Below, piece after piece: positions 561-60,100 of a stretch of DNA of 64,000 nt. Position 1 is the stretch's first letter; each line of letters opens with the position of its first letter. The translations under genes and the position numbers were made by a program. The notes under the pieces were generated by a model, which was not told the DNA's origin, did no database searches, and worked only from the letters and a program-made list of their open reading frames with translations. Origin of the DNA: Macrostomum lignano. Its lineage: Eukaryota. The stretch spans positions 1,178,001 through 1,242,000 of the forward strand of contig NIVC01000038.1 in assembly GCA_002269645.1 (NCBI GenBank). The letters are read 5' to 3'.

Positions 561-8659
<8,099 letters not shown>

Positions 8660-9115: not shown

Positions 9116-9194
9116 TTTTTTCTCCTTATTTTTGGCAGGAAATTTTAGAATTTAAAATTTTTAGCATATAAGAATTGTACAAAAGGCGTTTGCA

Positions 9195-10025
9195 ATATGG
9201 CACCAAAACAGCTGTCAAATTGGCGCCAAAACAGCTGTCAAATTGGCGCCAAAACAGCAGTCAAATTTACAGCTAAAGCAACTGTCAAATTGGCGCCAAA
9301 ACAGCTGTCAAGATGACGCCAAAACTGCTGTCAAGATGGCGCCAAAACAGCTGTCAAATTGGCGCCAAAACAGCTGTCAAGATGACGCCAAAACTGCTGT
9401 CAAGATGGCGCCAAAACAGCTGTCAAATTGGCGCCAAAACAGCTGTCAAGATGACGCCAAAACTGCTGTCAAGATGGCGCCAAAACAGCTGTCAAATTGG
9501 CGCCAAAACAGCTGTCAAGATGACGCCAAAACTGCTGTCAAGATGGCGCCAAAACAGCTGTCAAGATGGCGCCAAAACAGCTGTCAAGATGGCGCCAAAA
9601 CAGCTGTCAAATTTACAGCTAAAGCAACTGTCAAATTGGCGCCAAAACAGCTGTCAAGATGACGCCAAAACTGCTGCCAAGATGGCGCCAAAAAGCTGTC
9701 AAATTGGCGCCAAAACAGCTGTCAAGATGGCGCCAAAACAGCTGTAAAATTGGCGCCAAAACAGCTGTCAAGATGACGCCAAAACCGCTGTCAAGATGGC
9801 GCCAAAAAGCTGTCAAATTAGCGCCAAAACAGCTGTCAAGATGGCCCCAAAACAGCTGTCAAGATAGCGCCAAAACAGCTGTCAAGATGACGCCAAAACA
9901 GCTGTCAAGATAGCGCCAAAACAGCTGTCAAGATGACGCCAAAACAGTTGTCAAGATGGCGCCAAAAAGCTGTCAAATTAGCGCCAAAACAGCTGTCAAG
10001 ATGGCGCTAAAGCTGCTGTCAAATT
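9195..10025. repeat. Tandem repeat, ~22-bp unit (TGGCGCCAAAACAGCTGTCAAA/G)
   Basis: Direct reading, more than 30 copies. Confidence 0.95.
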
Positions 10026-13848: not shown

Positions 13849-15480
13849 TGGTGTTGTATCTCTAATAGATAATCGGCTTAGCTTAATAATCCGCTCAGTC
13901 GCGGTGGCCGTCTTCAGTACGACGTATATTTGCATACGGTTACAGTCACGCGTATAATTGTCTATGACCAAAGCCACACAACTAAGGCTGGGGATACACC
14001 ATCTCCCCTTTCAAAGTTCAACTATCATAGGTTTTCCTCCTATAGGTCAACCTGTAGCATCTGAGGTTTCTTAGTCTCTCGCCGAATCGGGTCCTCCTTG
14101 GCTCGGCCGACCCTCCGGATGCTCCAGGCATGCCTTGCTCGGTAGCACCGTCCGCGGCGGTCTTCTTGGCCTCGATTGGGCTGACTGGGATCCGCTTCCT
14201 GATGAACTTGCGGTTCCGCCGTAGACATCTCCCACTCGCCAGTCGAATCATGAAATCTCGGTTCCGTCCGGCTTCCACGATCACGCCGTACTTGTCCCAT
14301 CATCCGGTGTGACAGTCCTGAACCACCACTCTGTGATGCACTTTGATGTCCGGCAGGGGCTGAGCGTCTTGGTTGTAGTATTTCTCCGTAGTCGCCTTGA
14401 CTCTAGCCTGCTTCTCCTCGATCTCAGCTGCAGATTTTTGCCATTCAGGTGCGAACGCTCTTCTGTGTGCCGGAATCGTGTCACGAATTGGGTGGCCGAA
14501 CACTGTTTCAGCTGGGGACTTGCCGTCGTATCTTGGAGTGTTGAGATAGACTAAGAGGCCTTTTGACAGTTTCTCCCAGTCCAGCGTGCCAGTCTGATGG
14601 TTCCAAGACCCTCTGACGATCTTCTTCATTTCTTTCACCCCAGCTTCGGCGCGTTCGTTGCTCTGTGGATAATGTGGAGACGATACTCGGTGTTCGACGT
14701 TCCAGCGTGCTAGTAGGAAATCCTTGAAATTTTTTGCGTTGAATTGTGGACCGGCGTCTGACCAGAAAATGTCGGGGACCGATTTCTCGACGAATCGCTG
14801 TCGGATAGCACTGACGACTTTGGTTGCGGGTGTGTCATCGCCAAGGTAATTGAGAGCTGCCCAACCGGATAGGCCATCCACGATGACAAGGAAATTCTTC
14901 CCTGCATATTCAAATAGATCCGCGTAGATCTCTTGGAAGACTCGTTCCGGTGGCTCTGGAACGACCATGGGTTCCTTCGCCAGGCTAGGAAGATTTTCTT
15001 GGCATGGTTTGCACGTCTTAGCGATCTGCTCGATGTCGTTGATCAGGCCAGGCCAGAAAATGCTTTGCCTTGCTTGCTCCTTCATTTTGTGGCATCCCCT
15101 GCTGCATCTTCAGGAGATTTTCGAGGACGCTTCTCCTTAGCTTCCTAGGGATCAGTAGCCGTCTTCCAGCCAGGATGAGGTCGTCTTCGACGCAGAGTTG
15201 TTGCCGTAGGTGCCAGTACGCACGGATATTCTCTTGGAGGTTCGCCTTGCAGTTTGGAAAACCATCTAGGATTATCTTCTTGAGAAGCCGATATTCTGAA
15301 TCACGGTTTGCTGCTTCGGAGATTTCTTTCTCCGACTGCAACAAAGCGTGCACTGAGCTGATAGCCTGCTCCCTGTTGTCGAATTCCAGGATCTGATCGC
15401 TCGCTTTAGGCTCCTCCACCGGCGCTCTGGACAGTGCGTTAGCGTCATCATTTAGCTTGTACTTGATCCACCGAGCATTG
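13849..15480 (-). mobile_element. Decayed Ty3/gypsy LTR retrotransposon: partial pol (RNase H end, H2C2 zinc finger, rve integrase), PPT and a short 3' LTR
   Basis: ADALSR-like NALSRAP; zinc-finger region ...FWPGL...CKPCQ (HQG His degenerate); integrase EIYADLFEYAGKNFLVIVDGLSGW, SDAGPQF, SSPHYPQSNERAE. Frameshift near 15090 and an in-frame stop at 14300-14302. PPT AAAGGGGAGA (14002-14011, minus strand) precedes a TGGTGT...ACACCA-bounded LTR at 13849-14001. Confidence 0.9.
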
Positions 15481-16082
15481 ATGCACCAGCTGGGGTCTGG
15501 TGCGCCACCAATTTTCTCTCCAAATTTTCGCTCCACAAGTAAACTGAATTTAGCATTTTCAAGTTTTCCTTTAATCTTCAGTCTTGATTTTTTCGGGGTC
15601 ATCACATGGCCGAGTCATTGACACACCTTGAATGCGCTAGTGCTATTGCGGATCCCTGCAAGGCTTTGGGGTGGAGTACGGCGATACAGGAAATTAGTAG
15701 CTACCCTGTTACATGTACACGTGTCTTTCTGCACAGTACTGAAAATATAAGACAATATTAGATAAGATAGAGCTGTAGAGAGTGAGAGAGAGAGAGAGAG
15801 AGATTCATAAAGTCTGTTTATATTCACAGCTTGGATAAATTAGAAAAATAAAAAATACATGCATTCGAGCTAAAAGCTGTTTTACCCAGATACATATAAT
15901 TCTTGCTGCCTTAGAACACAACAGGTAAAGTTGAAATACGAATTTCTTTTCTTTATTATTTCCATAGACATTCATGGAAAAGTAACTAACTTTATTAGTA
16001 GCAGAAGCCTATTCTACCAATTTTGAAACTTTTGTGGCACAAAAAACGTTTAACGAGTCAATTAAAACAGTCGAATACCCAG

Positions 16083-16423: not shown

Positions 16424-17202
16424 TCGTTGAGTCACGTGACACGACAGTTCGTTTCCAAGAAATAAGCTTCGGCGGAAAAAGCGTACTGCCTGCACAAAAT
16501 TATAACAATATTAAACACATAGCCAAAACTGAATTTTTACAAATTCATGGTCTCTTTTTAAAGATTGAAAAATTGTTCACAACTGGCACTATCAAGTTTC
16601 ATTTCAAATTGAGCGGAAGTTTATAAGGCAAGAAATTATGAAACTTTTTTGCTTTGCTTAACAAAAGGGAATCTCCTCTTTTGAACCTACCTATTTCAAC
16701 CCTCTCCCCCAATGTACACTCAATGTACATTTGCAAAGTATACGTATCTTTGCTATTACCGCGTAAAAATAAGGAACTACGAGCTGTTTAGCTGGAATAA
16801 GCTCTGGCAACTCTAAATGCAGAACAGTTTTTAGAAGAACTCATGCAATACACATTTGCACTTGTCTCAAACTTGTGAAGCAACGGTAAGTTCTAAAGGG
16901 GCTGATCGAAAATTACCTTGGAATTTCAGTTGATCATGACTATACATCTACATCCCGAGTAATGTGTATTTTGAATGAGCAGGTAAATATAGTTTCACTT
17001 GGCCAATAATAAACGCTTGAAGTTGCTTAAATTTTAGTTCAACAGTTCGCTCAATCTCGACAGCTATTCGAAGAAGGACATGCCAAATCTAATCAGGGCC
17101 TACGTCTTAGGTCGGAGACGCTGGAGGATTAAAATTTGGAATTCTGTTTGAATACAAAAGTCTTTTGGAAGAAGGCATCCCGCCACTCAGTTTGTTATTT
17201 AT

Positions 17203-19782
17203 GTGGTGTTTAACAAAAACTCTGTCAAAAATCGATTGACGTCAGCTTTAGCATTTACTCGGATAAAGAATATTGAATTTTTTGCTTGCCAAGTGTTTGA
17301 TAGAGAATCAGTGCTGACTGTCGCTAAAATTGGTCGTTTGAAACTGCTCGACTCAATCAGATCCCAACTAATGGACACAGGACTATGCTTAGAGGCTGCT
17401 AAATGTGGCGCACAGTTTGGTCGTGTGTCAGTTGTGCGCTGTCTGTATTTAAAACTGCAAAGAGAATTTATTGACGAATTCTGCATTGAGACAGCGAAAT
17501 CTGCGGCCACATATCACCAGTGGGAAATTGTTCAACTCTTGATGACGTCCACTCTGCAGCACTGGCGATCGGATGAGACTTCGCTGACAGTCGTGAACCT
17601 GCCGACCGAGGAGAGCATGTTTGCAGACTTCTGCATGGTTGAGTTCAGAGACACGCCAAGTATGAACCTGATAGAGATGATGAAGTTTTTGCTTCAACAG
17701 ATCTCTGACATCCCGGACAGGGATCGGTGCAGCCTGGAGGTGGCGAAATTTGCTGCTAAGAAAACCGAATGGGAAGTCGTGAAACTTTTAGTAGCCAGCG
17801 TTACAGACTGCTTTGCAAGAGATCAGTGCTTCTTTGAATTCATAGAAGATGTCGCAGTAAAATGCGAGTGGAGCACCCTGAATCTGTTTTTGCACTGTAT
17901 AATAAAAGACGATCTAAAGAAGATTTCCTGTAAGAAAGCAGTCTCTGCCGCTTCAACAGTAGGAAATTATGAAGTTCTAAAGCTTTTTAACCAGATCGTG
18001 GTTGATTCTACGTTGAAATTTCATTGCTGCGCGGTTTTCGTAAACGGAGTTGCAGAATGTGGCGATTCTAAGATAATAATTTTGCTGCTCGAGCAGATTT
18101 CTGATGAACGTCTGCGCGATCAGTGCTGTTCTGAAGGGGCAAAGTCCGCTGCCAAGTTCGGGCATCTGGAATTGTTGAAACTATTGTCTCGGGAAATTAC
18201 TCACCCGGAGCTAAAAGAGACTTGCTACGTACAAGCTGTGAATGCCGCTGCAACAGAACGCCAGTGGGAGGCTGTGGAGTTCCTGCTGAAGGTGGCATGC
18301 GATCAAACCATGAGGGTCAAATGCTGCACAAAGGCTGCTAAGTCGGCAGCAAGATTTGGAAATTTAAAGATTCTTGACTATGCTGTTAATTTGATATGCG
18401 ACTTAAATTTCAAAGATAGCTGCTGCTTACAGGCAGCGCTGATTGCTGCAGATGAGCATCAGTGGGAAGTGGTGAAATTTCTTGTGCAGACTGTGACAGA
18501 CAGAAATGTGAGAGATCGGTGCTGCATGGAGGCAGTGAGGCCTGCTGCACGAGACAGTCAGTGGAAAGTGGTGAAGTTTCTGGTCCAGACCATTTCTGAC
18601 CAAAGCCTGAGAGACCAGTGCTGCATTGAAGCGGCAAAATCTGCAGCAATCAACGGTGTTTTGAAGGAGGTGAAGGTCCTGGTGCATACAGTCGCTGACC
18701 AAAAATTGAGAGATTACGGTTGCAAGGAGGCAGCGAAATCTGCTGCAGTCAATGGTCAGTTGGAGGTGGTAAAGTTTCTGGTTCAGACAGTCGCTGACCA
18801 AACAAACAGAGATCAGTGCTGCATTGAGGCAGCAGTATCTGCTGCAAGTGAGGGTCAGTGGGAAGTATTGAAGTTTCTGGTGCAGACAGTCGTTGACCAA
18901 ACAAACAGAGATCAGTGCTGCATTGAGGCAGCAAAATCTGCTGCAAGCAAAGGTCAGTGGGAGGTGGTGAAGTTTCTGGTTCAGTCAGTCGCTGACCAAA
19001 CAAACAGAGATCAGTGCTGCATTGAGGCAGCAAAATCTGCTGCAAGCAAAGGTCAGTGGGAGGTGGTGAAGTTTCTGGTTCAGTCAGTCGCTGACCAAAC
19101 AAACAGAGATCAGTGCTGCATTGGGGCAGCGAAATATGCTGCTGAAGAGGGTCAGCTAGAAGTCGCGAAGTTCTTCATCTCGTGTATCTCAAGTCCGGAT
19201 CCCAAAGCCAATCTCCGTTTCCAATATGCAGTCGCGGCTTGCTCTCGTCTTCATGAAGATGTCGTTGCATCCCTCGGCCTCGAGCCCGACTGGCTCTTCC
19301 AATCCAGCACCATCCTCAGCTTCACTGCAGCAATGGCCATCGAAGGCAGGAACTCTGTTCTCACCGACACCCTCTCTCGAATGCAGCCAGCTCACATCAC
19401 ACAGCTGCTTCGTCTCTCCATCTCTCAAAGACACGTGGCTCTTGCTGTCACACTGATCAATGATGAGCGAGTCAGCACACAGCATGTCGATCTGCCAGAC
19501 AGCACTGGAGCCACTGCTCTCATGCTGGCAGCTGATGAAGGTCATCACGAGCTCATTGAGAAACTCATCGATCTCGGTGCGTCAGTGCGTGCTGAAGACA
19601 GTCAGGGTCGGACTGCTCTGTCACGAGCGTGCGAAGCCGGTCACGTGCGAGCAGCCAAGGCTCTGATGAACAGAGGAGCGGATGCGAGTCATCAAGACGG
19701 TCGGGGTCTGACGTGTGCGCAGGTGGCACAGCGATTTGAGCAGCGGCAGGTGCTCCGACTTCTTGAACAGAATTCAGTGTGA
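17203..19782 (+). CDS. Ankyrin-repeat coding exon: ~15 atypical 33-aa repeats plus ~3 canonical C-terminal ankyrin repeats
   Basis: Repeat DQCCIEAAKSAASKGQWEVVKFLVQSVADQTNR is 33 aa. Canonical repeats DSTGATALMLAADEGHHELIEKLIDLGA and DSQGRTALSRACEAGH...GA. Uninterrupted 2.58-kb ORF. Confidence 0.92.
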   Translation: MVFNKNSVKNRLTSALAFTRIKNIEFFACQVFDRESVLTVAKIGRLKLLDSIRSQLMDTGLCLEAAKCGAQFGRVSVVRCLYLKLQREFIDEFCIETAKSAATYHQWEIVQLLMTSTLQHWRSDETSLTVVNLPTEESMFADFCMVEFRDTPSMNLIEMMKFLLQQISDIPDRDRCSLEVAKFAAKKTEWEVVKLLVASVTDCFARDQCFFEFIEDVAVKCEWSTLNLFLHCIIKDDLKKISCKKAVSAASTVGNYEVLKLFNQIVVDSTLKFHCCAVFVNGVAECGDSKIIILLLEQISDERLRDQCCSEGAKSAAKFGHLELLKLLSREITHPELKETCYVQAVNAAATERQWEAVEFLLKVACDQTMRVKCCTKAAKSAARFGNLKILDYAVNLICDLNFKDSCCLQAALIAADEHQWEVVKFLVQTVTDRNVRDRCCMEAVRPAARDSQWKVVKFLVQTISDQSLRDQCCIEAAKSAAINGVLKEVKVLVHTVADQKLRDYGCKEAAKSAAVNGQLEVVKFLVQTVADQTNRDQCCIEAAVSAASEGQWEVLKFLVQTVVDQTNRDQCCIEAAKSAASKGQWEVVKFLVQSVADQTNRDQCCIEAAKSAASKGQWEVVKFLVQSVADQTNRDQCCIGAAKYAAEEGQLEVAKFFISCISSPDPKANLRFQYAVAACSRLHEDVVASLGLEPDWLFQSSTILSFTAAMAIEGRNSVLTDTLSRMQPAHITQLLRLSISQRHVALAVTLINDERVSTQHVDLPDSTGATALMLAADEGHHELIEKLIDLGASVRAEDSQGRTALSRACEAGHVRAAKALMNRGADASHQDGRGLTCAQVAQRFEQRQVLRLLEQNSV

Positions 19783-22700
19783 GGATTATAATGTTATTAT
19801 CGGAGCTAAAAGTCCTTCTAAAATGAAAATAGGCAGTTGCTTATGAAGTATTTGCACTTTAGTTGGTCTGGAGATGGCCTGCATGGTAGGTCTTAGAATC
19901 CTACCGCTGCCACCAATGTCGTGTCTGCTGGCTTCCTCAGGCTGTCTCGGAAGGGCTGGCAGATCTTCTAGCTCCTGGCGGAGGCGTCTAGCTGGCGGTT
20001 TCTTAGAAACTAGTTCTCGTAGCGTAGGTAGTGCTGCCACCAGCTTCGTAGAGTCGCAGCCTTTGGTGAGGTGCTGAGCTCGTAGAAGCAAATAACTAGC
20101 AATAACTAGCAGTTCTCGAGCAGAGGCGTCCACAGTCAGCAGTCCCTGCCGGGCTGGTGCGGGGTTAGAGCGATGGTGCTAGCTTCGGGCGATCTGAGCT
20201 GGCCCGCTAACAGATAGCAGGAACAATTAGAAGCAGGCACTCGCAAAGTCGGGAGTCTTGGAGTTCAAACTTAGGCTCAAACTTGGCACACGAACTTGGC
20301 TTGAAACTGAGAGACAGGTGAAACGGTGAGGCAGAAAAGGGGACGCGCTTGTCTGAGCCAAGCCATGAGAGGGACTGCATTTATAGGGAGCATCGATTGC
20401 ACTATATCACGAAATGGTGCAATCGATGCGCGTCATAGATGACACTGTTGCTATTTTTAGCAACAAGCGAGCGGGTTCCGCCTTAGAAGAGGAGACAGGG
20501 GGTCCTGGCGCACGTGATGTCCCCATAAACACGAGCCCAGTGCACAATGAGGAAATCATTGTACTTTGGACTAATAAGACAGAAGAGGCTTGTCATGTGA
20601 CTGGCTCACACGACAAGGGGAAAAGGGCCCACAAGTGAAGGCACTCGTGACCTGGGACCGGAAAACAGAACGGCACTCCAGATTTGGAGGTGCCTAACAG
20701 AGACGAAACAGAGGCAGGCCAGACCAAACTGTCTGGGCACTGCAAAACGAGAACACGAGACAAAAGGGGGCAAACGAGGACAAACAGACAGACAGGCAAA
20801 CGGGCAAGGGAGAGGCCAGAGGACAGGCGAGAAGGGACAGACAACTGCCCAGCGGCAGACAGAAGCCTGGGGCGAGGGCGAGGAAACCAGCTGACTAGTG
20901 CGGCGCCTAACTAAATAGCGACTCACTACACTTAGCATCTTATCAGTCTTACTCATTTGCCAATTGTAGCAGAAACTTTATGGAAACCTTAGAAACTTTA
21001 TACGTTAGAGTTAATAGTTGACTGCCAATTGAGAATTGCGTAATCTTCTTTATATGTATTTGTCAGGGTCAAAGACGACACTCGGAATGAGAGGCAACTC
21101 AGCGAAGAGCATTCCAAGCTCTCAGACGACTCCCAGCAAGACAGGCGCCTGAGCGAAGAGCTTCATCGACTGCTTAGCGAGGCGGGATTCACCAGGGAGA
21201 GAGCGGAGTGTCAGCAGAGACTGGCTGACTGGCTTAAAGGAGTCGCTCGAGTCCTCACACAGGATGGCAGGCAGATAACGGGCAGCTACGCAGAGGGCTG
21301 GGCCAACAGTCTGGTGCAAGTGAACGGCAGGACAGCTGCAGACTCGGACATTGACTGGACTGTGCTGGTTGCTGGGCAAGAGTTCCACCTGGAAGGTGGC
21401 TGCGAAAGATGGAAGGACTCCTGCAGATATGCCACTCGGCTGCAAGTCAAGGAGGGCCACGCACAGGTGTCTTTGGGAGCAGGTGAGTGAGGCTGGGTTT
21501 AATAAATTCCGGACAATGTTTTGGTAGTTCATTGTGATGACGAGAATGAAGAGAAATGTAAAATTTTACAGCTAATTTCATTGCAGTAGATTATCAAGTG
21601 AAGCATTTGAAACAAAAAATTCAGGAAATCAACCAACCGTGACAGCGGCTGCATGCGGTGTGAGGCCTGCTCAAGACATCTGCCAGGCGATCCAGTGCTG
21701 CAGCAGTTTCTGTCAAAGCAGAGTTGAGAGGCTTCTCAGCTATCAGGATACGAACGTTCACCTTGTCAGAGCGACCAGACCGAGCTCGACCAACGAGCTC
21801 AGAGTGAGCTTCAGCTTCCAAGAGAAAGAAATCATGAGACAGATGAGCACAGTACAGGGCCAGCTGTTCACACTCATCAAGTTCATCTTCAAGAGACACT
21901 TGCCGCTCACTCTGGACACACCTGGACTCAAAACCTATCATGCAAAGACTATGCTTTTCTTCATGCTGGAAAAGCATGGCACATATAGTTGGCGGAATGA
22001 GGCTTGGCAACCCCAATATCTGATCGCTCTGCTCAAGGAGTCTCTCGACATGATGCTGAGCTTCATCAACTCAAACACTTCGCCCGATGAGTGCATGCCG
22101 CACTTCTTCATGCCCGACGCTCCGCTCTACTTCAAGAACGCTGGAATCGGCGGCGACTTTGACAACACGAAGGCGAGGGTTCGAGACCGACTTTGTGAGC
22201 TGAGAAGCGACATCGGCGGAGTGGTCGAGCAGCTGAGGAGACTCGTGAGACCTCTGCAGTCAGAGAAGTTCTACTTTCACCCGTTCACTCTGCTGCCTCT
22301 GACAGCGCCGCCTGCTGTCACGGAGATCAGGGAAAGAAGTAACTATCTGGAAACTTGCAAGTTTGCAGACGTGTACAGTGTGGTGCACCAGTGTGTGAGC
22401 GAGCTGCAGTCGGAATCGAGCGACAGAGACACCCTGATGAGGCAGCTCAGTCTCCTGCATGAGCTGCAGTGGTGCAAGTGCGCCGCCCTGTGCATGACCG
22501 CCATGGCGCATTTGAAGTTCGAAGAATCTGAGGAGGCTGAGAGATTCGCCATGGAGCTGCAGAGACATCAAGTTGGGTCAGGGTTGAAGCCACAGGATAT
22601 TCGAGATGAGAGTATAAGCAGTGGAGAAAAAGAGATAAAACTGCCAGAAAACTCAGACTGGGCGTGGAGGTTCTGCCTCCCCTGCGACTCTCCGCCTCGC

Positions 22701-23228
22701 TTCCCATTCCTTCCCGAGTTCACGCAGACTCTGTTCACAGCCAGACTGTCGCAGCCTCTCTCCTCTCACCTGTACGTGAACTTCCGCTGCCTGAGCTGGA
22801 GTCTCCAAGCTGAGCTGCTCCGCAATCGCGCACCTGCAATCGCATTCGATCATTGGATTGAGCAGCTGCTTGGAGACCCGGACTTGGAGGAGCTGCTCAC
22901 TCTGGCTCACTACAGCGACTGCCGCGAGCACGTGGAGCTCAGCCTGCAGCAGATGGAGATGATCGAGAAAGAGAGACGCGTCGCCATGGAGACGCAGGAC
23001 GAGGAGAAGATCGGCTGGGTCAGGCAGAAGCGGTGGCGAGTTTCGAACGGCAGCGGCAGCGACAGCGGCGCTCACCGCAGCAGGAAAGATGAGGAGCGGA
23101 GGCTGTGGGCGAGGGCGAGGTTGCGGCGAGACGGGGCCGATTTGGGGGGTCTGGTTGCCATGGAAACAGCAGTAGAGCAGTTAGACAGCTGGACTCACGC
23201 CAAGCTCAATAGAATGAAACTGCAATGA
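17371..23228 (+). CDS. Ankyrin-repeat / cGAS-like (Mab-21, cGLR) nucleotidyltransferase fusion protein, ~1,475 aa (predicted exons <=17371-19778, 21067-21482, 21625-23228)
   Basis: Donor GTGAGG at 19779 (phase 2) matches acceptor TTTGTCAG|G at 21067 (phase 2). Donor GTGAGT at 21483 matches acceptor TTCAG at 21624 (phase 1). Exon 2 holds GSYAEG...DSDID. Exon 3 holds QDICQAI, RVSFSFQEK, LKTYHAKTMLFF and MPHFF (Mab-21 motifs). The 5' end is unresolved: the frame is open from 17152 and the first in-frame ATG is at 17371. Confidence 0.75.
19917..20615 (-). mobile_element. 699-bp LTR followed by a tRNA-Leu primer-binding site; internal region absent
   Basis: Termini TGTCGTGT...ACACGACA form an 8-bp inverted repeat. 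On the minus strand TGGTGGCAGCGGTAGGATTC (19896-19915) follows, complementary to the 3' end of eukaryotic tRNA-Leu (…ACCGCUGCCACCA). TATA-like CCCTATAAAT near 20380. Confidence 0.85.
21067..23228 (+). CDS. cGAS-like receptor (Mab-21 family NTase) exons
   Basis: G-S-x-x-E-G...D-x-D motif (GSYAEG, DSDID), third Asp in QDICQAI, and Mab-21 lid and helical motifs. Exon 21067-21482 has no in-frame Met, so an upstream exon is required. Confidence 0.9.
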
Positions 23229-23499: not shown

Positions 23500-23710
23500 C
23501 TGACAGCCTGACAGCTCCCTCATGAGCATTCAGTGACTGACAGCTCCCTCGTGAACATTCAGTGACTGACAGTTCCCTCGTGAACATTCAGTGACTGACA
23601 GCTCCCTCGTGAACATTCAGTGACTGACAGCTCCCTCGTGAACATTCAGTGACTGACAGCTCCCTCGTGAACATTCAGTGACTGACAGCTCCCTCGTGAA
23701 CATTCATTGA
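23500..23710. repeat. Tandem repeat, 29-bp unit (GTGACTGACAGCTCCCTCGTGAACATTCA)
   Basis: About 7 copies without spacers, downstream of the cGLR stop. Confidence 0.9.
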
Positions 23711-24660
23711 CTAAAGACTGAATTAACCTACAAGCTTTTCAAAATTGACGCCTAAACTCTAAAATGTAATTTTACTCTGACGTTTAATTTTTTTTTCTGT
23801 TTTAGTTCGTAAATACAGAATGATGTGTTTTATTCTCCGGGTGGCGGCCCAGGAGCTGCACAACAGCCTCACAATGTTTAAATTTTAATCGTGCCACGTC
23901 CTAAATAGCAGAGAGGTAGAAGAAAGAGAGGGACAGGGGGACGGCCAGCCAATCACGAGCCGCCGCCGGTGGGGGGGGATAGCAGAGCCTAGACCAGGTC
24001 AGGGTGAGGTGAAGCCCAAAGCCGGCCAGACCCACCTGCCCAACCAGAGAGCGGGGAGGGAAAGAGACTGCATAACTCAACCGATGAATCTTTCTGATTG
24101 GATGTTGGTGTTGTAAAGCGACCGGCAACTTCAGTTGGTTGTACGGTTGCAGTTGCGTTGCTCTGGCTTTTATGGTCGAAGGGGGGGGACAAAGACAAGA
24201 ATTCTACTTGTAAATTATTTTGCGAGTCGGTGTTGTTAGCACACTCATTTTGGCACCACAGGTACTCATTTTGGCGACTTCACCAGACCCCTAACCTTTA
24301 ACCTTAAAGCACTGGCGATCTGACCGGGATCTAGGGACCAGATTTGCTTGAAAATTATGTGCATGTATTGGCTAGAATATTACATACTCTACAGTCTATA
24401 CAGTACTGTTTTAGCTGCGCCTAAATTGCGTAGCAAAATCCATGTAAGCCAAGTAGCAAATAAGCCACCCAGTTGCGGGAATGCTTTAGTCTAGGGCACC
24501 GATAGGATGCAGCTCGCACTGCGGAACAGGACTGCCGAGCGGAAGAGTTTGGCTTGAGCGCTCGATAACCTCTGAGTACTAGCAAATAACTCCTTAGCAA
24601 CTGCCTTAAGAAATCTACAGCATTCCGTTCTGCAAGCTGCTTTAAAAACTGAAGAGGAAA

Positions 24661-26775
24661 ATGCGAGCCCGACTCCGCACGGTGACCGGTGCCGCCCAGG
24701 AGGTGGCTGGCATCACGAGAACCCACGGCTTGCTGCACATATTCCTGTCCAGAGGCACAGCTCGACGGCTCTTCTGGCTGCTTCTGTTCGTAGCTGCCCT
24801 GATCGGCTGCACCGTCCACCTGGCAAAATTGGTGCAGAAATTCACCGATCGCTCCGTTGAGTCGCGGCTGAAGCTGAGGAGCGAACGAGCCCAGTTTCCC
24901 GACGTCACAATCTGCAATTTCAAGCCCATGTCTCTTAGCTTATCCGTGAATAGTCAATATTACAACTACTTGAAAGCCTTCTGGGGCAACTTCGACAACT
25001 GGTTCCAAGAGGACACCAAGAAGCGCCCGCAGGAATCGGATGAAAGCTACCAAAACCGAATTGAGAAGGTGTGCAAGAAGGTCCTGGACGTGATGTGGGT
25101 GTCGGGCGACACCAGAGACATCTCCCACCTCGATAAGACCATGCTGCTGAGCTGCCGCTACAACAACGAGCCCTGCAGTCACAAGAACTTCTCGCTTGTC
25201 CAGACCAGCCGGTTCTGGAGCTGCTACACGTTCCACCCGGACCCGGGGCAGTCGTCCAGCGGTTCTGGGGGCAGGGGAGCCGAGCTCGACATGGTGCTCT
25301 TCACCGATGGCTACACAGACAGTTCCTACTATTCTAGGTATATTTTTCAGACCGAACAGGAAAAAAATAACCCTCCATCCTGCATGTCCCGCATATTATT
25401 CAGAAGCAGATCTGCCAATCGGCTACTGCAGAACAACCAGCCTCAGTCTACTGGATTGCGCCTTTTCATTCACGACGCGAAAAGCTACCCGATGAGTCGT
25501 ACGTAATTTTGAGGTCGCATTAAATTGTTTTCATAGCTCGTAGGTCACATAGTCTCATAGCCCACGCACAACCCATGCCAAACCAGTCTCACAGCCCATG
25601 CCAAACCCATGCCAAACCGCAGAGACCGAGTTCGTGGACGTGGCCTCAGCCACCAGCACCTCCATCAAACTCAGGCCGGTCCACAACCGACTCAAGTCGA
25701 CGCCGAGCCGCAGTTGCTCCGAGCCTCCAATCGAAACCATCAACTATGTCAGGCACTTCTCCAACGCCTCGCTGAACGTGGTCACCAAGGCCTACTCAAA
25801 GTCCGTCTCCGATTTCGTAGTCGAGGCACAGCAGAGCATCCTGCACAGCAACTGCGGCTGCTACTCGCACCTGCTCCCGTTCTCGGTGAATACGAGCGAC
25901 CTTTGCTACTTCGCTCCACCACAGGAGTGGATCACCCCATCGGATGCTGTGCTGAAGAGAATCGACTGCCATGATCACTGGTTTCAGCACGCACAGAGGA
26001 AAAGCGAGGAGCTGGCGAAGGAGTTCCAACACCGGATGTGGTGCCAATTCACTCAGCAACGGCCTTGGCAGCAGAGCCGCGGGTGGCCCCCGTTCAGCGC
26101 CATTCAAGAGATCTGGGAGAACCTGATGGTGCCACAAGTCACACATGGAGTCGAGTTCCTGCCCGAGGATGGCAAGGTGCATCATATCTACGAGTATAAG
26201 AAAAATCACAGATCCAGACAGGAAATTCTAGTTAATTTTCGTCTATCTCACGACAGAACCTGCCGTAATGTTTATTAATTAAAGAACTTACAGGCATACG
26301 AAGATTATATAAATTTCGGAACGCCTTGCGTTCGTCATAGCGAATTGGCGGATAACCTGGCAGCAGTCAGCATCAGCTTGCAGAGTCCTGCCGCGGACGT
26401 TTACGAAGAGATGTACAGATACCACTGGACTGAGGCCCTGTCGGAGGTGAGAGCTGCATTCCGGTTATTGCAATATTCCAGTGTTTAAGGCTGGTGGTTA
26501 GACCCGCCTTAGCCCCACTGTCTCACCCTCAGCCCCACTTGCATGCCCAGTTAAAATCGGCTCCAGCAAATCCCACCGCCCTGGTTCCCTTAGCAACACT
26601 GAGCTGCTGTGCCAGTTTTCAATTTTTCCTCGATATTCCGCAGGTCGGAGGAACTCTGGGACTCTGGCTTGGCATCAGCGTCGTGAGCACATTTGAGCTG
26701 CTTGAGTTCATCTATATTCTGGTGCAGAGGTGCAGGAGAAACGATGACGACTCGGACACTGAAGAAGAGTCCTGA
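24661..26775 (+). CDS. DEG/ENaC (ASIC-like, amiloride-sensitive) channel subunit, ~558 aa (exons 24661-25498, 25623-26176, 26294-26446, 26644-26775)
   Basis: Pre-TM1 HG motif (TRTHG), TM1 RRLFWLLLFVAALIG, FPDVTICNFKP, SCRYNNEPC, GLRLFIHD, and TM2 LSEVGGTLGLWLGISVV with the G-x-S filter. Splice phases 1,0,0 sum to 1,677 nt. Confidence 0.9.
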
Positions 26776-26869: not shown

Positions 26870-27710
26870 ACGTCTCTGTAATTTACTGTCACAGCATGAA
26901 AAATCCCTGTAATTTACAGTCACAGCATGATCAATCTCTGTAATTTACTGTCACAGCATGACAAATCCCTGTAATTTACTGTCACAGCATGAAAAATCCC
27001 TGTAATTTACTGTCACAGCATGATAAATCTCTGTAATGTGCTGTCACAGCATGATCAATCTCTGTAATTTACTGTCACAGCATGATAAATCTCTGTAATT
27101 TACTGTCACAGCCTGAAAAATCCCTGTAATTTACTGTCACAGCATGATAAATCTCTGTAATTTACTGCCACAGCATGATAAATCTCTGTAATTTACTGTC
27201 ACAGCATGATCAATCTCTGTAATTTACTGTCACAGCATGACAAATCCCTGTAATTTACTGTCACAGCATGAAAAATCCCTGTAATTTACTGTCACAGCAT
27301 GACTCATCCCTGTAGTTTACGGTCACAGCATGTAAATCTCTGTAATTTACTGTCACCGCATGATAAATCTCTGTAATTTACTGTCACCGCATGATAAATC
27401 TCTGTAATTTACTGCCACAGCATGATAAATCTCTGTAATTTACTGTCACAGCATGATCAATCTCTGTAATTTACTGTCACAGCATGACAAATCCCTGTAA
27501 GTTACTGTCACAGCATGAAAAATCCCTGTAATTTACTGTCACAGCATGACTCATCCCTGTAGTTTACGGTCACAGCATGTAAATCTCTGTAATTTACTGT
27601 CACCGCATGATAAATCTCTGTAATTTACTGTCACCGCATGTTTATTTCCTGTAATCTACTGTAACAGCATGATAAGTATAATATCTCTGTAATTTTCTGT
27701 CACAGCCCGG
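26870..27710. repeat. Tandem repeat, ~31-bp unit (CTGTAATTTACTGTCACAGCATGATAAATCT)
   Basis: About 27 copies, direct reading. Confidence 0.95.
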
Positions 27711-57132: not shown

Positions 57133-60100
57133 ATGGATCCCAGCTTGTTCCAGCATCATCATCAATCGTCCATATTTTATCCGCACAGCTTCGACCCTCA
57201 TCAGCAGCCCCCGATGCCCGCCTGTCACGCTCAGCAGCAATTTCCCAATCAGCCTCATCATCAGCACCAGCAGCTCCAGCATCAGCAGCATCAGCCAGCC
57301 GGCAAGAAGCGCGGCCGTCTTGACCCCCGCCTCCGTCGCATCCATCAGCGCAAGGCGGCCAATCAGCGCGAGCGCAAGCGGATGCGCTCCATCAATGCCG
57401 CGTTTGAAGGCCTACGAAGGCGCCTGCCAGTGGAGCAGTCCGAGGACAGGAGGCTGTCCAAGGTGGAGACGCTCAAGCACGCCATCCAGTACATTCAGGG
57501 CCTCGCCGATCTGCTCAACGCTTTGGAGGCCGACGAGGCCAGGACCAACCCTGATGGCGTGGCCGCCAGGAGGAGGGCCAAGATTGTCCTGCTGTGCAGG
57601 ACTGCCAATGATGAGGGGTCTTCGACGGCTTCGGCTGCTGCTGGCAGTGGCTGGCAAGGTGAGTTGATTGAGCTTGATTCTCATGGGTGAGATGGATCTC
57701 CCTCTCCGCTGTCTACCATCTCCCTCTCCGCTGTCTACCCTCTCCTTCTCCGCTGTCTACCCTCTCCTTCTCCGCTGTCTACCCTCTCCTTTTCCGCTGT
57801 CTACCCTCTCCCTCTCCGCTGTCTACCCTCTCCGTCTCCACTGTCTACCCTCTCCTGCTCCGCTGTCTACCCTCTCCCTCTCCGCTGTCTACCCTCTCCT
57901 TCTCCGCTGTCTACCCTCTCCTTCTCCGCTGTCTACCATCTCCCTTTCCGTTGTCTACCATCTCCCTCTCCGCTGTCTACCCTCTCCTTCTCCGCTGTCT
58001 ACCCTCTCCCTTTCCGCTGTCTACCCTCTCCCTCTCCGCTGTCTACCCTCTCCCTCTCCGCTGTCTACCCTCTCCCTCTCCGCTGTCTACCCTCCACTGT
58101 CTACCATCTCCCTTTCCGCTGTCTACCCTCTCCCTTTCCGCTGTCTACCCTCTCCCTCTCCGCTGTCTACCCTCTCCTTCTCCGCTGTCTACCCTCTCCT
58201 TCTCCGCTGTCTACCATCTCCCTTTCCGTTGTCTACCCTCACCCTCTCCGCTGTCTACCCTCACCCTCTCCGCTGTCTACCCTCACCCTCTCCGCTGTCT
58301 ACCCTTTACTATAGAACCATCTCCAACATGTAGCAAAAGGTTTAACTTATATTAATAATTGGGCCAAAAAGTCAATCAGCTAGCATTAATAATTTAAATA
58401 GAAAATATAATGGAACTAAACAAAGATTGCATTTTTTCGTGAGACTACTATGTAGCTCTATTATATGCGCCAATGTATATATATATCGATATCTATACAG
58501 CTCTGCGATATAACTGCATTAATAAATGATTGATCGAACCGAATAGAAGAATCGCTGCCTGCATGCATGCAGCTCACTCGCTTTTATAGAATGCAAACAC
58601 TTGATGTTGGAGGCTGCGGCTATAGCAGCAAAAGGCGCGGGAACTGCCAGCAGTATAAGGGGAGAGACAGACTTGGAGAGACAGAAAAATGGCCCCTCGA
58701 GACATTGCGCAACCGTTCCTGCAGGCAGCTAGATTTTGAAACCCTCTTATACTTGTTAATCCTTATCACACTAAATCCTTTGTTAAGAAGTCCGCCCAGC
58801 AGCAGACTTAATGCTAATGATGTAACTATGCACACACAGCAGCATATTCTGGGTTTGAGAATGACGGACACTTCAGTTGGGGAAATTATGAAATTGTTGC
58901 CAAGTTGCTGAGAGAAGGTGCTGAAGGATTGAAGGAGGCTGGGTCTGCTCAGTATGGAGCTGCTTGAGAACTCTCTCAAGGAAAAAGTGGGTCCGGGAGT
59001 TGCTTCGGGGTTTTTCACTCTTTCTGACCCGTTATGCTCTTCAGGAAAAGTCGCTGTTGCTTCAACGGTTGCTTCTTCAGGGGCTGCTTCTTCAGGGGCT
59101 GTTTCTTCAGGAGATGTTTCTTCAGGGGCTGCTTCTTCAGGAGATGTTTCTTCAGGGGCTATTTCTTCAGGGGCTTGGTTCTTCAGGAGATGTTTCTTCA
59201 GGGGCTGCTTCTTCAGGAGATGTTTCTTCAGGGGCTGCTTCTTCAGGGGCTGCTTCTTCAGGGGCTGTTTCTTCAGGGGATGTTTCTTCAGGGACTGTTT
59301 CTTCAGGGGCTTGGTTCTGCTTGGTTCTTCAGGGGCTGTTTCTTCAGGGGCTTGGTTCTGCTTGGTTCTTCAGGGGCTGTTTATTCAGAGGCTGTTTCTT
59401 CAGAGGTATAGCAATAGCGACAAAATCAAGGTGAACAATAACAATGATCAAAATCATATGCTTGGAATGCGAACTTTCACTCACTATTAGTTCAATTCTC
59501 ACTAATTTAATTCTATAATAGCACACGTGGCCATGTCCGCCGCCCAGATCCCCCCGTTGTAGTCACCATGGTCAGGAACAGCCGCACACAGGCAAGAAGA
59601 TGCCTGTGTGCGTGACATGTTATAGACAATAAATCTTATCATTGATGTTGTGTGACTGTGGCTTTGGCCACTTCAGATCTTGTGGCTCTCATCCGTCTCG
59701 ATTCTCCATCCACATCCTTTTAATGTGAATTAAACAACCGACGCGTGTGCACCTCCGTATGCAACTGTGCTTTCCCCTGTCTGCTTGTGCGTGACTTGCT
59801 GGGGATGCGATGCTGCATGGGAACTGTTAGGATTCGAGCTGAATTGTTTCAAACCATATCGAGTTTTTGTTACTGGCCAGTTCAGGATGTTCTGCTCTCT
59901 CTACTCTCCTACCAACCCTGTCTACTATCCTATCTACTCTGTCTACTGTTCTGTTAGCTACCATATCTACTCTCTGTTATCTACCCTGTCTACTCTCTGT
60001 TAACTACCCTGTCTACTCTGTTATCTACCCTGTCTACTCTCTGTTATCTACCCTGTCTACTCTCTGTTAACTACCCTGTCTACTCTGTTATCTACCCTGT

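What the first reader, a model, noticed from the sequence alone, without database searches (positions are those of the whole stretch)
17152..23228. Hidden ankyrin-array / cGAS-like nucleotidyltransferase fusion: a candidate invertebrate innate-immune sensor
Seen: the 859-aa ankyrin ORF ends ...AAT TCA GT|GTGAGG, and the stop codon lies inside a strong donor. Splicing there (phase 2) to TTTGTCAG|G at 21067 keeps the frame into an exon the ORF track misses. That exon encodes GSYAEG...DSDID, and a phase-1 intron joins it to the 21625-23228 exon (QDICQAI, RVSFSFQEK, LKTYHAKT, MPHFF). The middle exon has no in-frame Met, so it needs an upstream exon. Established: the G[S] plus D-x-D plus third Asp arrangement is the catalytic core of cGAS/Mab-21/CD-NTase enzymes, and animal cGLRs make cyclic dinucleotides after sensing a ligand. 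The vertebrate cGAS Zn-thumb (H-x5-CC-x6-C) is absent here. Inference: a ~1,475-aa protein in which ~18 repeats act as a variable ligand-recognition or autoinhibitory module controlling second-messenger synthesis. Accessory-domain cGLRs exist in invertebrates, but a very long atypical repeat array on a catalytically intact enzyme in this lineage looks uncharacterised.
Basis: partly seen in the sequence, partly recalled or inferred. Interest (0 to 1): 0.9.

Follow-up and report, generated by a model that had tools for sequence, protein, structure and literature searches.

The report
Flatworm ankyrin-repeat cGAS-like enzyme gene
This is a real three-exon gene from a Macrostomum flatworm that joins a long ankyrin-repeat array to a cGAS-like signalling enzyme, but it is one more copy of a large gene family that a 2023 survey of animal cGAS-like receptors had already listed.

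Summary
The 859-codon ankyrin ORF ends at a GT donor (19779). Splicing to the acceptor at 21067, then 21482 to 21625, gives one open frame to the stop at 23226-23228. That is 1,475 aa from the first in-frame ATG (17371).

Dozens of Macrostomum lignano gene models read straight through the same ankyrin, linker and enzyme order. The best match is 84-85% identical. Those models come from an RNA-seq-based annotation.

The enzyme part folds as cGAS/Mab-21 (pTM 0.87; Foldseek E 1e-9 to cGAS). It keeps GS, D-I-D and a third Asp, which are intact in 89 of 102 aligned family domains. It has no cGAS zinc thumb, and its charge is near neutral.

The novelty claim is overstated. Li et al. 2023 list ankyrin-cGLR fusions as a class. 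They record the Ank_2 domains of the closest paralogue (PAA68676.1) and cloned its enzyme part for their screen. No Macrostomum enzyme is named as active.

Verdict: a new member of a known kind. Product, ligand, role of the repeats and expression of this copy are untested.

The parts
17155..17370 (+). Open frame upstream of the first ATG. It is either 5' UTR or the tail of an exon spliced or trans-spliced from upstream.
   Evidence: The frame is open from about 17155 with no in-frame ATG before 17371. ORF residues 1-51 match no paralogue repeat.
17371..19778 (+). Coding exon 1, the ankyrin-repeat region (803 aa from the first in-frame ATG).
   Evidence: Pfam Ank_2 4.7e-40 with 9 stretches, plus Ank_4, Ank, Ank_3 and Ank_5.
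17383..19212 (+). About 17-18 atypical Cys-rich 33-residue ankyrin-like repeats. The consensus is GQWEVVKFLVQxVADQTNRDQCCIEAAKSAAS.
   Evidence: An iterated repeat HMM finds 19 segments between ORF residues 61 and 670.
18459..19142 (+). The youngest part of the array: a 99-bp unit repeated 6.9 times at 81% match.
   Evidence: Tandem Repeats Finder.
19498..19767 (+). Three canonical ankyrin repeats next to the junction.
   Evidence: The best Pfam Ank, Ank_2 and Ank_5 stretches fall at ORF residues 760-842.
19779..21066 (+). Intron 1 (1,288 nt, phase 2). The donor is GTGAGG, with the TGA stop at 19780-19782 inside it, and the acceptor is tttgtcAG.
   Evidence: Sequence and frame check. The paralogue locus L001 has a phase-2 donor at the same place.
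21067..21482 (+). Coding exon 2: linker, N-terminal spine helix, the GS motif (21281-21286) and D-I-D (21347-21355).
   Evidence: Translation, residue coordinates, conservation.
21483..21624 (+). Intron 2 (142 nt, phase 1), GTGAGT...ttcAG.
   Evidence: The donor position and phase are the same in L001.
21625..23228 (+). Coding exon 3: the rest of the enzyme core, the C-terminal extension and the stop codon (23226-23228).
21149..22244 (+). cGAS/Mab-21-fold nucleotidyltransferase core (318 aa, interrupted by intron 2). The third catalytic Asp codon is at 21675-21677.
   Evidence: AF2 pLDDT 83.8 and pTM 0.87. The Foldseek PDB top 50 is cGAS except one MAB21L1 chain at rank 39, best E 1e-9, TM 0.64. 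A profile search of PDB is best at Sp-cGLR1 8gjy, 1e-4.
21909..22127 (+). Mab-21_C (HhH/H2TH-like) Pfam match.
   Evidence: PF20266 scores 25.2 bits against a cut-off of 24.1.
22245..23225 (+). Family-specific C-terminal extension of about 327 aa. It is mostly helical with a small sheet and carries the motifs FYFHPFTLLPLT, DWAWRFCLPC and HLYVNFRCLSWSLQAELL.
   Evidence: Conserved across paralogues. It is folded in the AF2 model, with most 10-residue blocks at pLDDT 75-95 up to about residue 610. It has no Pfam hit and no separate PDB match in the top 50.

Best explanation
The region is one protein-coding gene of a Macrostomum flatworm, either M. lignano or a close congener. It belongs to the lineage-specific, heavily expanded ankyrin-cGLR family.

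The predicted product has about 1,475 aa and four parts:
1. An N-terminal solenoid of about 17-18 atypical Cys-rich 33-residue ankyrin-like repeats plus three canonical ANK repeats.
2. A short variable linker.
3. A cGAS-like (Mab-21 fold) nucleotidyltransferase core with a complete active-site set: G875-S876, D897-I-D899 and D959, numbered from the ATG at 17371.
4. A family-specific C-terminal extension of about 330 aa.

The most likely mode of action is inferred, not shown. The core would be a signalling nucleotidyltransferase that makes a cyclic or short linear nucleotide second messenger when switched on. The repeat array would be the protein- or ligand-binding module that controls or localises that activity.

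The core is near neutral (pI 7.7; whole protein 5.9) and has no Zn thumb. So the trigger is less likely to be double-stranded nucleic acid bound in the cGAS manner, and more likely a protein or another non-nucleic-acid cue.
For: Gene structure, shown:
- Canonical GT/AG sites and a single open frame.
- Paralogue proteins map onto the window with the same exon limits.
- P0047 aligns to fusion residues 375-1531 in one HSP at 75% identity. More than 30 further models span repeats, junction and enzyme.
- The paralogue locus L001 has donors at the same positions and phases.
- The NCBI BOX15 gene models come from an RNA-seq-based, genome-guided transcriptome (PMC5730564).

Constraint, shown: dN/dS against the closest paralogue is 0.30-0.55 in every part, including the repeats at 0.47.

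Fold, shown:
- AF2 pTM 0.87.
- Foldseek top hits are cGAS with probability 1.00. Sp-cGLR1, MB21D2 and MAB21L1 also appear.

Active site:
- GS, D-x-D and the third Asp are intact in 89 of 102 aligned family domains.
- D129 (core numbering) lies on a predicted strand.
- It aligns with the conserved Asp of distant bivalve-type relatives.
- It sits 27 residues before VHLV, comparable to the spacing seen in coral cGLRs.

Family:
- Li et al. 2023 list the closest paralogue as a cGLR with Ank_2 domains and cloned it for their screen.
- They report that nucleic-acid-sensing cGLRs have pI above 8.5. Here the core is 7.7.
Against: - There is no transcript evidence for this particular copy. Its exact protein is not in the searched collection.
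- The start codon is not settled.
- Pfam's Mab-21 nucleotidyltransferase model PF03281 does not hit at all, and Mab-21_C is only 1 bit above its cut-off.
- A profile of the N-lobe alone finds no cGAS in PDB. The mapping of catalytic residues therefore rests on motif pattern, predicted secondary structure and family conservation, not on a residue-level structural superposition.
- The fold alone does not separate active cGLRs from inactive MAB21L1, which is also hit.
- No M. lignano enzyme is named among the active enzymes in the text of Li et al.. The text also says many cGLRs in that screen appeared inactive in vitro.
- The last four repeats are nearly identical. That fits a scaffold as well as it fits a specific recognition surface.
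Confidence: 0.7

Rival explanations
1. Two products rather than one. The main mRNA of this copy retains intron 1 or ends there, giving an ankyrin-only protein of about 803 aa. The cGLR exons would then be silent, or used only from another promoter or leader.
For: The TGA stop lies inside the donor, so any unspliced transcript ends the protein exactly there. Some paralogue models lack the repeats (P0003, 659 aa) and others stop early in the enzyme part (P0044, P0043). [quoted passage not shown]
Against: Exon 2 has no in-frame ATG, and its frame is closed 8 codons upstream. The first Met downstream comes after all the catalytic residues. Most paralogue models read through the junction. The donor position and phase are conserved in L001. 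The enzyme exons are under purifying selection.
Confidence: 0.12
2. The fusion is real, but the Mab-21 domain does not make a second messenger. It would act as a scaffold or binding domain, as proposed for Mab21L1 and for shrimp Mab21 proteins, or carry out a different nucleotidyl transfer.
For: MAB21L1 and MB21D2 are also structural matches. Relatives fused to a caspase have lost the second and third acidic residues (P0027 and P0054), so the fold is used without catalysis within this same family. Shrimp Mab21 proteins are reported to signal outside the nucleic-acid-sensing paradigm (PMC12928593, abstract seen). No Macrostomum activity is named in Li et al..
Against: GS, D-I-D and the third Asp are kept in 89 of 102 aligned domains across a family diverged to below 30% identity. 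That is hard to explain without selection on catalysis. Li et al. state that Mab21L1/2/3 lack a predicted functional active site, unlike this protein.
Confidence: 0.18
3. This copy is a recently dead or unexpressed duplicate in a highly redundant, repeat-rich genome.
For: Its protein is absent from the annotated sets searched. It sits among minisatellite arrays and retroelement remains. There is no clear start codon context or AATAAA signal.
Against: All 1,531 codons are open across three exons with intact splice sites. dN/dS is below 1 in every part. All catalytic residues are intact.
Confidence: 0.1

Closest known systems
Macrostomum lignano ankyrin-cGLRs catalogued by Li et al. 2023, for example PAA68676.1 / BOX15_Mlig016402g1 (our P0001) and PAA93208.1
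   Same: The order is the same: atypical Cys-rich 33-residue repeats, three canonical ANK repeats, linker, cGLR core, C-terminal extension. The enzyme part is 84% identical to the window's. The intron positions and phases and the catalytic residues are the same.
   Different: The window copy has a much longer repeat array, about 17-18 atypical repeats against about 3-8 in P0001 and P0002. It has no MGxxxS N-terminus. Its linker differs: P0001 has an extra 42-nt micro-exon. Its exact protein is not in the searched collection.
[quoted passage not shown]
   Same: They are animal cGLRs with appended repeat or interaction domains. Sp-cGLR1 is the best PDB match by sequence profile (1e-4).
   Different: They belong to a distant clade. 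The family profile scores coral cGLRs far below bivalve ones. Sp-cGLR1 itself is a single-domain dsRNA sensor that makes 3'3'-cUA.
Vertebrate cGAS
   Same: It has the same bilobal Mab-21 fold (TM 0.64, E 1e-9), the same GS, D-x-D and D arrangement, and the shared RLSFS..EKEI and Mab-21_C helices.
   Different: The window protein has no Zn thumb: only 8 residues lie between EKEIMRQM and QGQLF, and there is no H-x5-CC-x6-C motif. Its pI is near neutral rather than basic. There are 20 residues between GS and D-I-D. It carries ankyrin and C-terminal appendages.
Bivalve-type cGLR expansion (Crassostrea and Mizuhopecten entries of Li et al. Table S3)
   Same: These are the nearest relatives outside Macrostomum found here. 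They share GS-x-x-EG[FW], S-D-x-D, the (H)GP...D..A third-Asp segment and the W/LR[IV]SFS motif.
   Different: They are mostly single-domain proteins. Macrostomum has an 8-residue insertion between GS and D-x-D, the repeat array and the extension.
Human MB21D2 and MAB21L1
   Same: They have the same fold and also appear among the structural matches.
   Different: Li et al. describe Mab21L1/2/3 as lacking a predicted functional active site. Here the catalytic set is intact.

Membership tests
cGAS-like receptors (cGLR; Mab-21 / CD-NTase superfamily) | Bilobal cGAS/Mab-21 nucleotidyltransferase fold | tested here: met
   The AF2 model of the 318-aa core has pLDDT 83.8 and pTM 0.87. The Foldseek PDB top hits are cGAS at E 1e-9, probability 1.00 and TM 0.64. 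Sp-cGLR1, MB21D2 and MAB21L1 are also matched.
cGAS-like receptors (cGLR; Mab-21 / CD-NTase superfamily) | Match to the Pfam Mab-21 models (PF03281 nucleotidyltransferase domain; PF20266 Mab-21_C) | tested here: inconclusive
   PF20266 scores 25.2 bits against a cut-off of 24.1, which passes marginally. PF03281 gives no hit even at E up to 1. A family profile against PDB hits Sp-cGLR1 at 1e-4 and cGAS at about 3e-4, over the C-lobe only. An N-lobe profile finds nothing.
cGAS-like receptors (cGLR; Mab-21 / CD-NTase superfamily) | Active-site set: G-[GS], then [DE]-h-[DE]-h, then a third acidic residue on a later strand | tested here: met
   G-S, D-I-D-W and Q-D-I are present and intact in 89 of 102 aligned family domains. 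The third Asp lies on a predicted strand and aligns with the conserved Asp of distant relatives. Residue equivalence to cGAS is inferred, not superposed.
cGAS-like receptors (cGLR; Mab-21 / CD-NTase superfamily) | Synthesis of a nucleotide second messenger, usually on ligand binding | not testable with these tools
   This needs an enzyme assay. The closest paralogue was cloned for the Li et al. screen, but its result is only in a figure I cannot read. The text names no Macrostomum enzyme as active.
cGAS-like receptors (cGLR; Mab-21 / CD-NTase superfamily) | A cognate receptor (STING or other) in the same genome | not tested
   No verified STING query sequence was at hand, and the eukaryote genome could not be scanned. 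M. lignano is not in the cGLR/STING count table of Li et al..
Vertebrate cGAS proper (orthologue) | Zn thumb H-x5-CC-x6-C and a basic DNA-binding surface | tested here: not met
   The motif is absent. The core pI is 7.7 and the whole protein 5.9.
Ankyrin-repeat proteins | Tandem helix-turn-helix repeats of about 33 residues that match Pfam Ank models | tested here: met
   Ank_2 4.7e-40 (9 stretches), Ank_4 7e-32 and Ank 1.5e-27. The period is 99 bp. Nineteen repeat segments were found. Most repeats are atypical, with CC-I-E in place of T-P-L-H.
Macrostomum ANK-cGLR family (Li et al. 2023 Tables S2 and S3) | Full-length collinear similarity to catalogued members, with shared intron positions | tested here: met
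   84-85% identity over 89-97% of the enzyme part. Single-HSP alignments run across the repeats, junction and enzyme. Donors sit at the same positions and phases in L001.

The most novel reading that the evidence does not exclude
The ankyrin array is itself the sensor. It would bind a protein or another non-nucleic-acid cue, from a pathogen or from a guarded host factor, and so release an otherwise autoinhibited cGLR core. The family would then be a modular, NLR-like receptor system built on cGLRs, in the one flatworm lineage seen here that expanded them, while most flatworms have none. Array length would be tuned by unequal crossing-over. Sister genes would have swapped catalysis for a directly fused caspase effector.
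Probability: 0.2. Interest if true: 0.7.

Novelty: new member of a known kind. Interest (0 to 1): 0.35.

Why it matters
- Li et al. report that most flatworms have no immune-type cGLRs. In these searches every close relative with a species name is from M. lignano. One unnamed metagenome protein is the only exception. The family forms about 80 clusters at 50% identity.
- The family therefore offers a tractable place to ask what appended repeat domains do to a cGLR. M. lignano can be made transgenic.
- It also allows the question of whether cGLRs can sense something other than nucleic acid.
- For this particular window the value is modest. It adds one unannotated, long-array copy to a catalogued family, and it shows that the ORF track hides the real gene structure.
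- The more interesting lead is at family level: compact genes in which a catalytically degenerate cGLR-like domain is fused to ankyrin repeats and an apparently intact caspase.

Tried and rejected
- **Upstream first exon.** I looked for an exon encoding the MGQNQS-type N-terminus of the paralogues. tblastn and a motif scan of 9-17.4 kb found none.
- **Large protein search with the N-terminus.** The first 420 residues of the ORF returned nothing at E up to 1e-5. A local phmmer against the proteins already fetched does find the paralogue repeats (1e-56). The empty result is therefore a limit of the candidate step on repeats, not evidence of absence.
- **hhalign against coral and beetle cGLRs.** Global mode gave a meaningless end-to-end match. 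Local mode aligned only the C-lobe (91% probability) and, weakly, the GS motif.
- **N-lobe profile against PDB.** No cGAS was found. Model coordinates are not exposed, so I could not measure whether the three Asp converge.
- **The 672-aa model against PDB.** Hits were dominated by the enzyme core and said nothing about the C-terminal extension.
- **Screen result for the Macrostomum constructs.** Only the construct list is held as text.
- **Caspase-fused entries in the Li et al. tables.** None are in the stored, truncated parts.
- **Literature on Macrostomum with cGLR or STING.** Nothing relevant turned up.
- **Species identity.** Only coding exons are shared with the paralogue locus, at 84-90% nucleotide identity. 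I cannot say whether the window is M. lignano or a congener.
- **Considered and rejected.**
  - A bacterial or viral origin: the gene has introns and its close relatives with a species name are all from a flatworm.
  - A cGAS orthologue: there is no Zn thumb and the pI is neutral.
  - An inactive Mab21L-type protein: the catalytic set is intact.

Full report
**1. What is in the sequence**

The window is eukaryotic DNA, rich in introns and minisatellites. On the + strand an 859-codon ORF runs from 17203 to 19782. It ends ...GAA CAG AAT TCA GT|GTGAGG. The GT at 19779-19780 is a good donor, and the TGA stop (19780-19782) lies inside it.

A pyrimidine-rich acceptor, ttctttatatgtatttgtcAG, puts the next exon base at 21067. 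That exon ends GGA GCA G|GTGAGT at 21482. A second acceptor, ttcAG, starts the last exon at 21625, which runs to the stop at 23226-23228.

Joining 17203-19778, 21067-21482 and 21625-23228 gives one open frame of 1,531 codons. Among nearby GT and AG sites, only 19779 with 21067 keeps the frame and has a pyrimidine tract. The exon-2 frame is closed 8 codons upstream of 21068 and has no ATG. Exon 2 therefore cannot start a protein on its own.

**2. The splice is supported by relatives**

I searched the spliced 672-residue C-terminal part against 5.8 billion proteins. It returned 45 hits. All but one unnamed metagenome protein are from the flatworm Macrostomum lignano. The best are 84-85% identical over 89-97% of the query. 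Most carry ankyrin Pfam domains and Mab-21_C in the same protein.

The sequences read straight from the canonical ankyrin repeats, through a short variable linker, into ...LSEELHRLLSEAGFT...GSYAEGW...DSDIDW. tblastn of these proteins against the window places the exon limits at 19764, 21062-21484 and 21618-23225.

P0047 (1,217 aa) aligns to fusion residues 375-1531 in a single HSP at 75% identity. More than 30 other models also span the junction.

In the genomic locus of the closest paralogue (L001) there is a phase-2 donor at the same place, four to five residues after ...VLRLL. A phase-1 donor follows ...VGAG, as in the window. That paralogue also has an extra 42-nt micro-exon in the linker.

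The NCBI BOX15 gene models derive from a genome-guided RNA-seq transcriptome (PMC5730564). The fused architecture is therefore transcript-based for the paralogues. For the window's own copy there is no direct transcript evidence, and its exact protein is not in the collection.

**3. Is this copy alive?**

All three exons are open. Against the closest paralogue locus, dN/dS values are:

| Part | dN/dS |
|---|---|
| Enzyme core part of exon 3 | 0.30 |
| Exon 2 | 0.38 |
| Ankyrin C-terminal part | 0.47 |
| C-terminal extension | 0.55 |

Only coding exons are conserved at the DNA level. This is purifying but fairly relaxed selection, as expected for a fast-evolving family. It argues against a dead copy.

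**4. The start**

The frame is open back to about 17155, but the first in-frame ATG is at 17371. A local phmmer shows that ORF residues of about 52-124 already match paralogue repeats, while residues 1-51 match nothing.

An upstream exon or a trans-spliced leader cannot be excluded, since about 39% of M. lignano genes are trans-spliced. The MGxxxS N-terminus of several paralogues is not found in the window.

**5. The repeat array**

Pfam calls ankyrin repeats with high confidence: Ank_2 at 4.7e-40 with nine stretches. Tandem Repeats Finder sees a 99-bp unit repeated 6.9 times at 18459-19142. An iterated repeat HMM finds 19 segments between residues 61 and 670.

That amounts to about 17-18 atypical 33-residue repeats with the consensus GQWEVVKFLVQxVADQTNRDQCCIEAAKSAAS. 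A less regular stretch of about 100 residues follows, and then three canonical ANK repeats (residues 766-855).

The array is Cys-rich at 4.8%. Its last four units are almost identical, which points to recent unit duplication or homogenisation. Paralogues carry far fewer of these units: about 3-4 in P0001 and about 8 in P0002.

**6. The enzyme part**

By sequence it is a distant Mab-21 relative:
- Mab-21_C passes Pfam's cut-off by one bit, and PF03281 does not hit.
- A family profile against PDB is best at Sp-cGLR1 (8gjy, 1e-4) and then cGAS, over the C-lobe only.

By structure it is clear:
- An AlphaFold2 model of the 318-residue core, built from a 14-sequence family alignment, has pLDDT 83.8 and pTM 0.87.
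- Forty-nine of its 50 best Foldseek matches in PDB are cGAS chains and one is a MAB21L1 chain (rank 39). The best match has E 1e-9, probability 1.00 and TM 0.64.
- The 672-aa model also matches Sp-cGLR1 and MB21D2.

The fold alone does not separate active cGLRs from inactive Mab21L proteins, so the active site decides.

**7. The active site**

The core has G-S (codons at 21281 and 21284), D-I-D (21347-21355) and a later Asp in PAQDICQAI (21675). I aligned 102 family domains that cover all of these positions. In 89 of them GS, both Asp of D-x-D and the third acidic residue are intact.

Per-column counts are G 127/129, S 126/128, D 125/130, D 123/130 and D 107/123. The first Asp of DSDID is variable.

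Three observations support the third Asp:
- It lies on a predicted β-strand.
- It is 60 residues after the D-I-D pair.
- It aligns with a conserved Asp in the (H)GP...D..A segment of distant relatives, which resemble the bivalve cGLRs in Table S3 of Li et al..

Its distance to the VHLV strand is 27 residues, comparable to the spacing between SVDLVPAL and VHVV in coral cGLRs. RVSFSFQEKEIM is the counterpart of the RLSFS..E motif shared by these cGLRs.

I could not superpose coordinates, so residue equivalence to cGAS is inferred. The Zn thumb is absent: there is no H-x5-CC-x6-C motif, and only eight residues lie between EKEIMRQM and QGQLF. The core pI is 7.7 and the whole protein 5.9. Li et al. 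report pI above 8.5 for nucleic-acid-sensing cGLRs.

**8. The C-terminal extension**

After the core come about 330 residues that are conserved across the family (FYFHPFTLLPLT, DWAWRFCLPC, HLYVNFRCLSWSLQAELL). In the 672-residue model (pTM 0.76) this stretch is folded: mostly helices with a small sheet, and pLDDT of 75-95 in most blocks up to about residue 610. It has no Pfam match and no visible PDB match.

**9. The family**

An exhaustive HMMER search of 1.84 billion cluster representatives with the core profile gave 81 proteins at E below 1e-30 and 1,156 at E below 1e-3. I looked up the names of ten of the hits. All seven of the stronger hits (E of about 1e-26 or lower) are linked to M. lignano. 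Six are named M. lignano proteins, and the seventh carries only an accession of the same series as those.

In a local comparison, the family profile scores another M. lignano cGLR highest. Bivalve cGLRs come next, and coral and beetle cGLRs come far lower. This is a lineage-specific expansion whose nearest outside relatives are the bivalve-type cGLRs.

**10. What is already known**

Li et al. 2023 (PMC9980059) make these points:
- 87% of cGLRs are single-domain, but some carry TPR or ankyrin repeats.
- ANK-cGLR is a class in their Figure 1C, and they annotate ANK- and death-domain-fused cGLRs in a coral.
- Their Table S2 lists Ank_2 domains for PAA68676.1. That is BOX15_Mlig016402g1, the same protein as P0001, the window gene's closest relative.
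- Their Table S3 lists five M. lignano constructs (rows 89-93), including PAA68676.1, cloned without the repeats.
- The main text never names a Macrostomum enzyme among the 15 active ones. It notes that many cGLRs were inactive in vitro, probably for want of the right ligand.

The kind is therefore known and the family is catalogued. Its chemistry, its ligand and the role of the repeats are not known.

**11. How it most likely works**

- Shown: one gene, and a repeat-enzyme-extension architecture.
- Shown from a predicted structure: the core has a cGAS fold.
- Shown: a conserved catalytic set, with purifying selection on every part.
- Inferred: the core makes a nucleotide second messenger when activated. 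The repeat array binds a protein or other ligand and controls or localises the enzyme. The near-neutral charge and the missing Zn thumb argue against cGAS-style binding of double-stranded nucleic acid.

Rivals are:
- an ankyrin-only product by intron retention, since the stop lies in the donor;
- a non-catalytic or differently catalytic Mab-21 domain;
- an unexpressed duplicate.

Each is less likely, for the reasons given in the Rival explanations section, but none is excluded without RNA and enzyme data.

**12. Verdict**

The finding is real and correctly dissected. It is a new, long-array member of a known and catalogued family, not a new kind of system. Interest is moderate to low for this locus.

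The family-level questions remain open: what the repeats sense, what the product is, whether a STING exists in this lineage, and what the caspase-fused, catalytically degenerate relatives do. They are testable in a transgenic-capable flatworm.

Noticed in passing
L002:3001-6651 (P0027); also P0054: Two M. lignano relatives carry a cGLR-like domain, ankyrin repeats and a caspase (Peptidase_C14) in one protein. P0027 is a compact 3.65-kb gene with three tblastn blocks. Its caspase keeps the SHG and QAC motifs. In both proteins the cGLR-like domain has lost the second metal Asp (now N) and the third Asp (now S or T). It looks like a catalytically dead sensor domain wired directly to a protease.
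   Followed up: partly
window 21386-21761 (core residues H80, C85, C136, C137, H157): A set of His and Cys residues is strongly conserved across the family: H80 118/127, C85 107/126, C137 104/124, H157 107/132 and C136 82/123. It may be a zinc site at a different place from the cGAS Zn thumb. The geometry could not be checked without model coordinates.
   Followed up: partly
window 19777-19784: The ankyrin ORF's TGA stop sits inside the intron-1 donor. Simple intron retention would therefore give an ankyrin-only protein. That could be a regulated decoy isoform, or it could mean nothing.
   Followed up: no
L001:8001-28291 (paralogue P0001): In the closest paralogue the linker is built differently. 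It has two short introns around a 42-nt micro-exon (NPQHLQAAAQRLHP). The intron equivalent to the window's 142-nt intron 2 is about 17 kb long. Several paralogues start MGQNQS or MGQYLS, which resembles an N-myristoylation signal, and the window copy lacks this.
   Followed up: partly
window 1-64000, e.g. 6569-8234, 9193-10022, 26873-27675, 59900-61104: The window is packed with minisatellite and microsatellite arrays. There are 47 TRF rows with score of at least 200, including (GACA)n with about 420 copies, which explains the AT skew of 0.64 at 6-8 kb. This fits the report that tandem and simple repeats make up 15% of the M. lignano genome.
   Followed up: partly
window 23508-23712: A 29-bp tandem array (7.1 copies, 97% match) lies about 280 bp downstream of the stop codon. 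No AATAAA signal is visible in the about 470 nt read after the stop.
   Followed up: no
window 24661-25506 (+): The next ORF downstream on the same strand matches the amiloride-sensitive sodium channel family (ASC, PF00858, 1.2e-30). It is probably the first large exon of a DEG/ENaC channel gene.
   Followed up: partly
window 14300-15605 (-): Remains of an LTR-retrotransposon integrase (Integrase_H2C2 and rve) lie about 1.6-2.9 kb upstream of the gene, on the opposite strand.
   Followed up: partly
window 17203-18462: The large protein search returned no hit for the first 420 residues of the repeat array. A local phmmer against the paralogues already fetched gives E 1e-56. Empty results from that tool on repeat proteins should not be read as absence.
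   Followed up: yes
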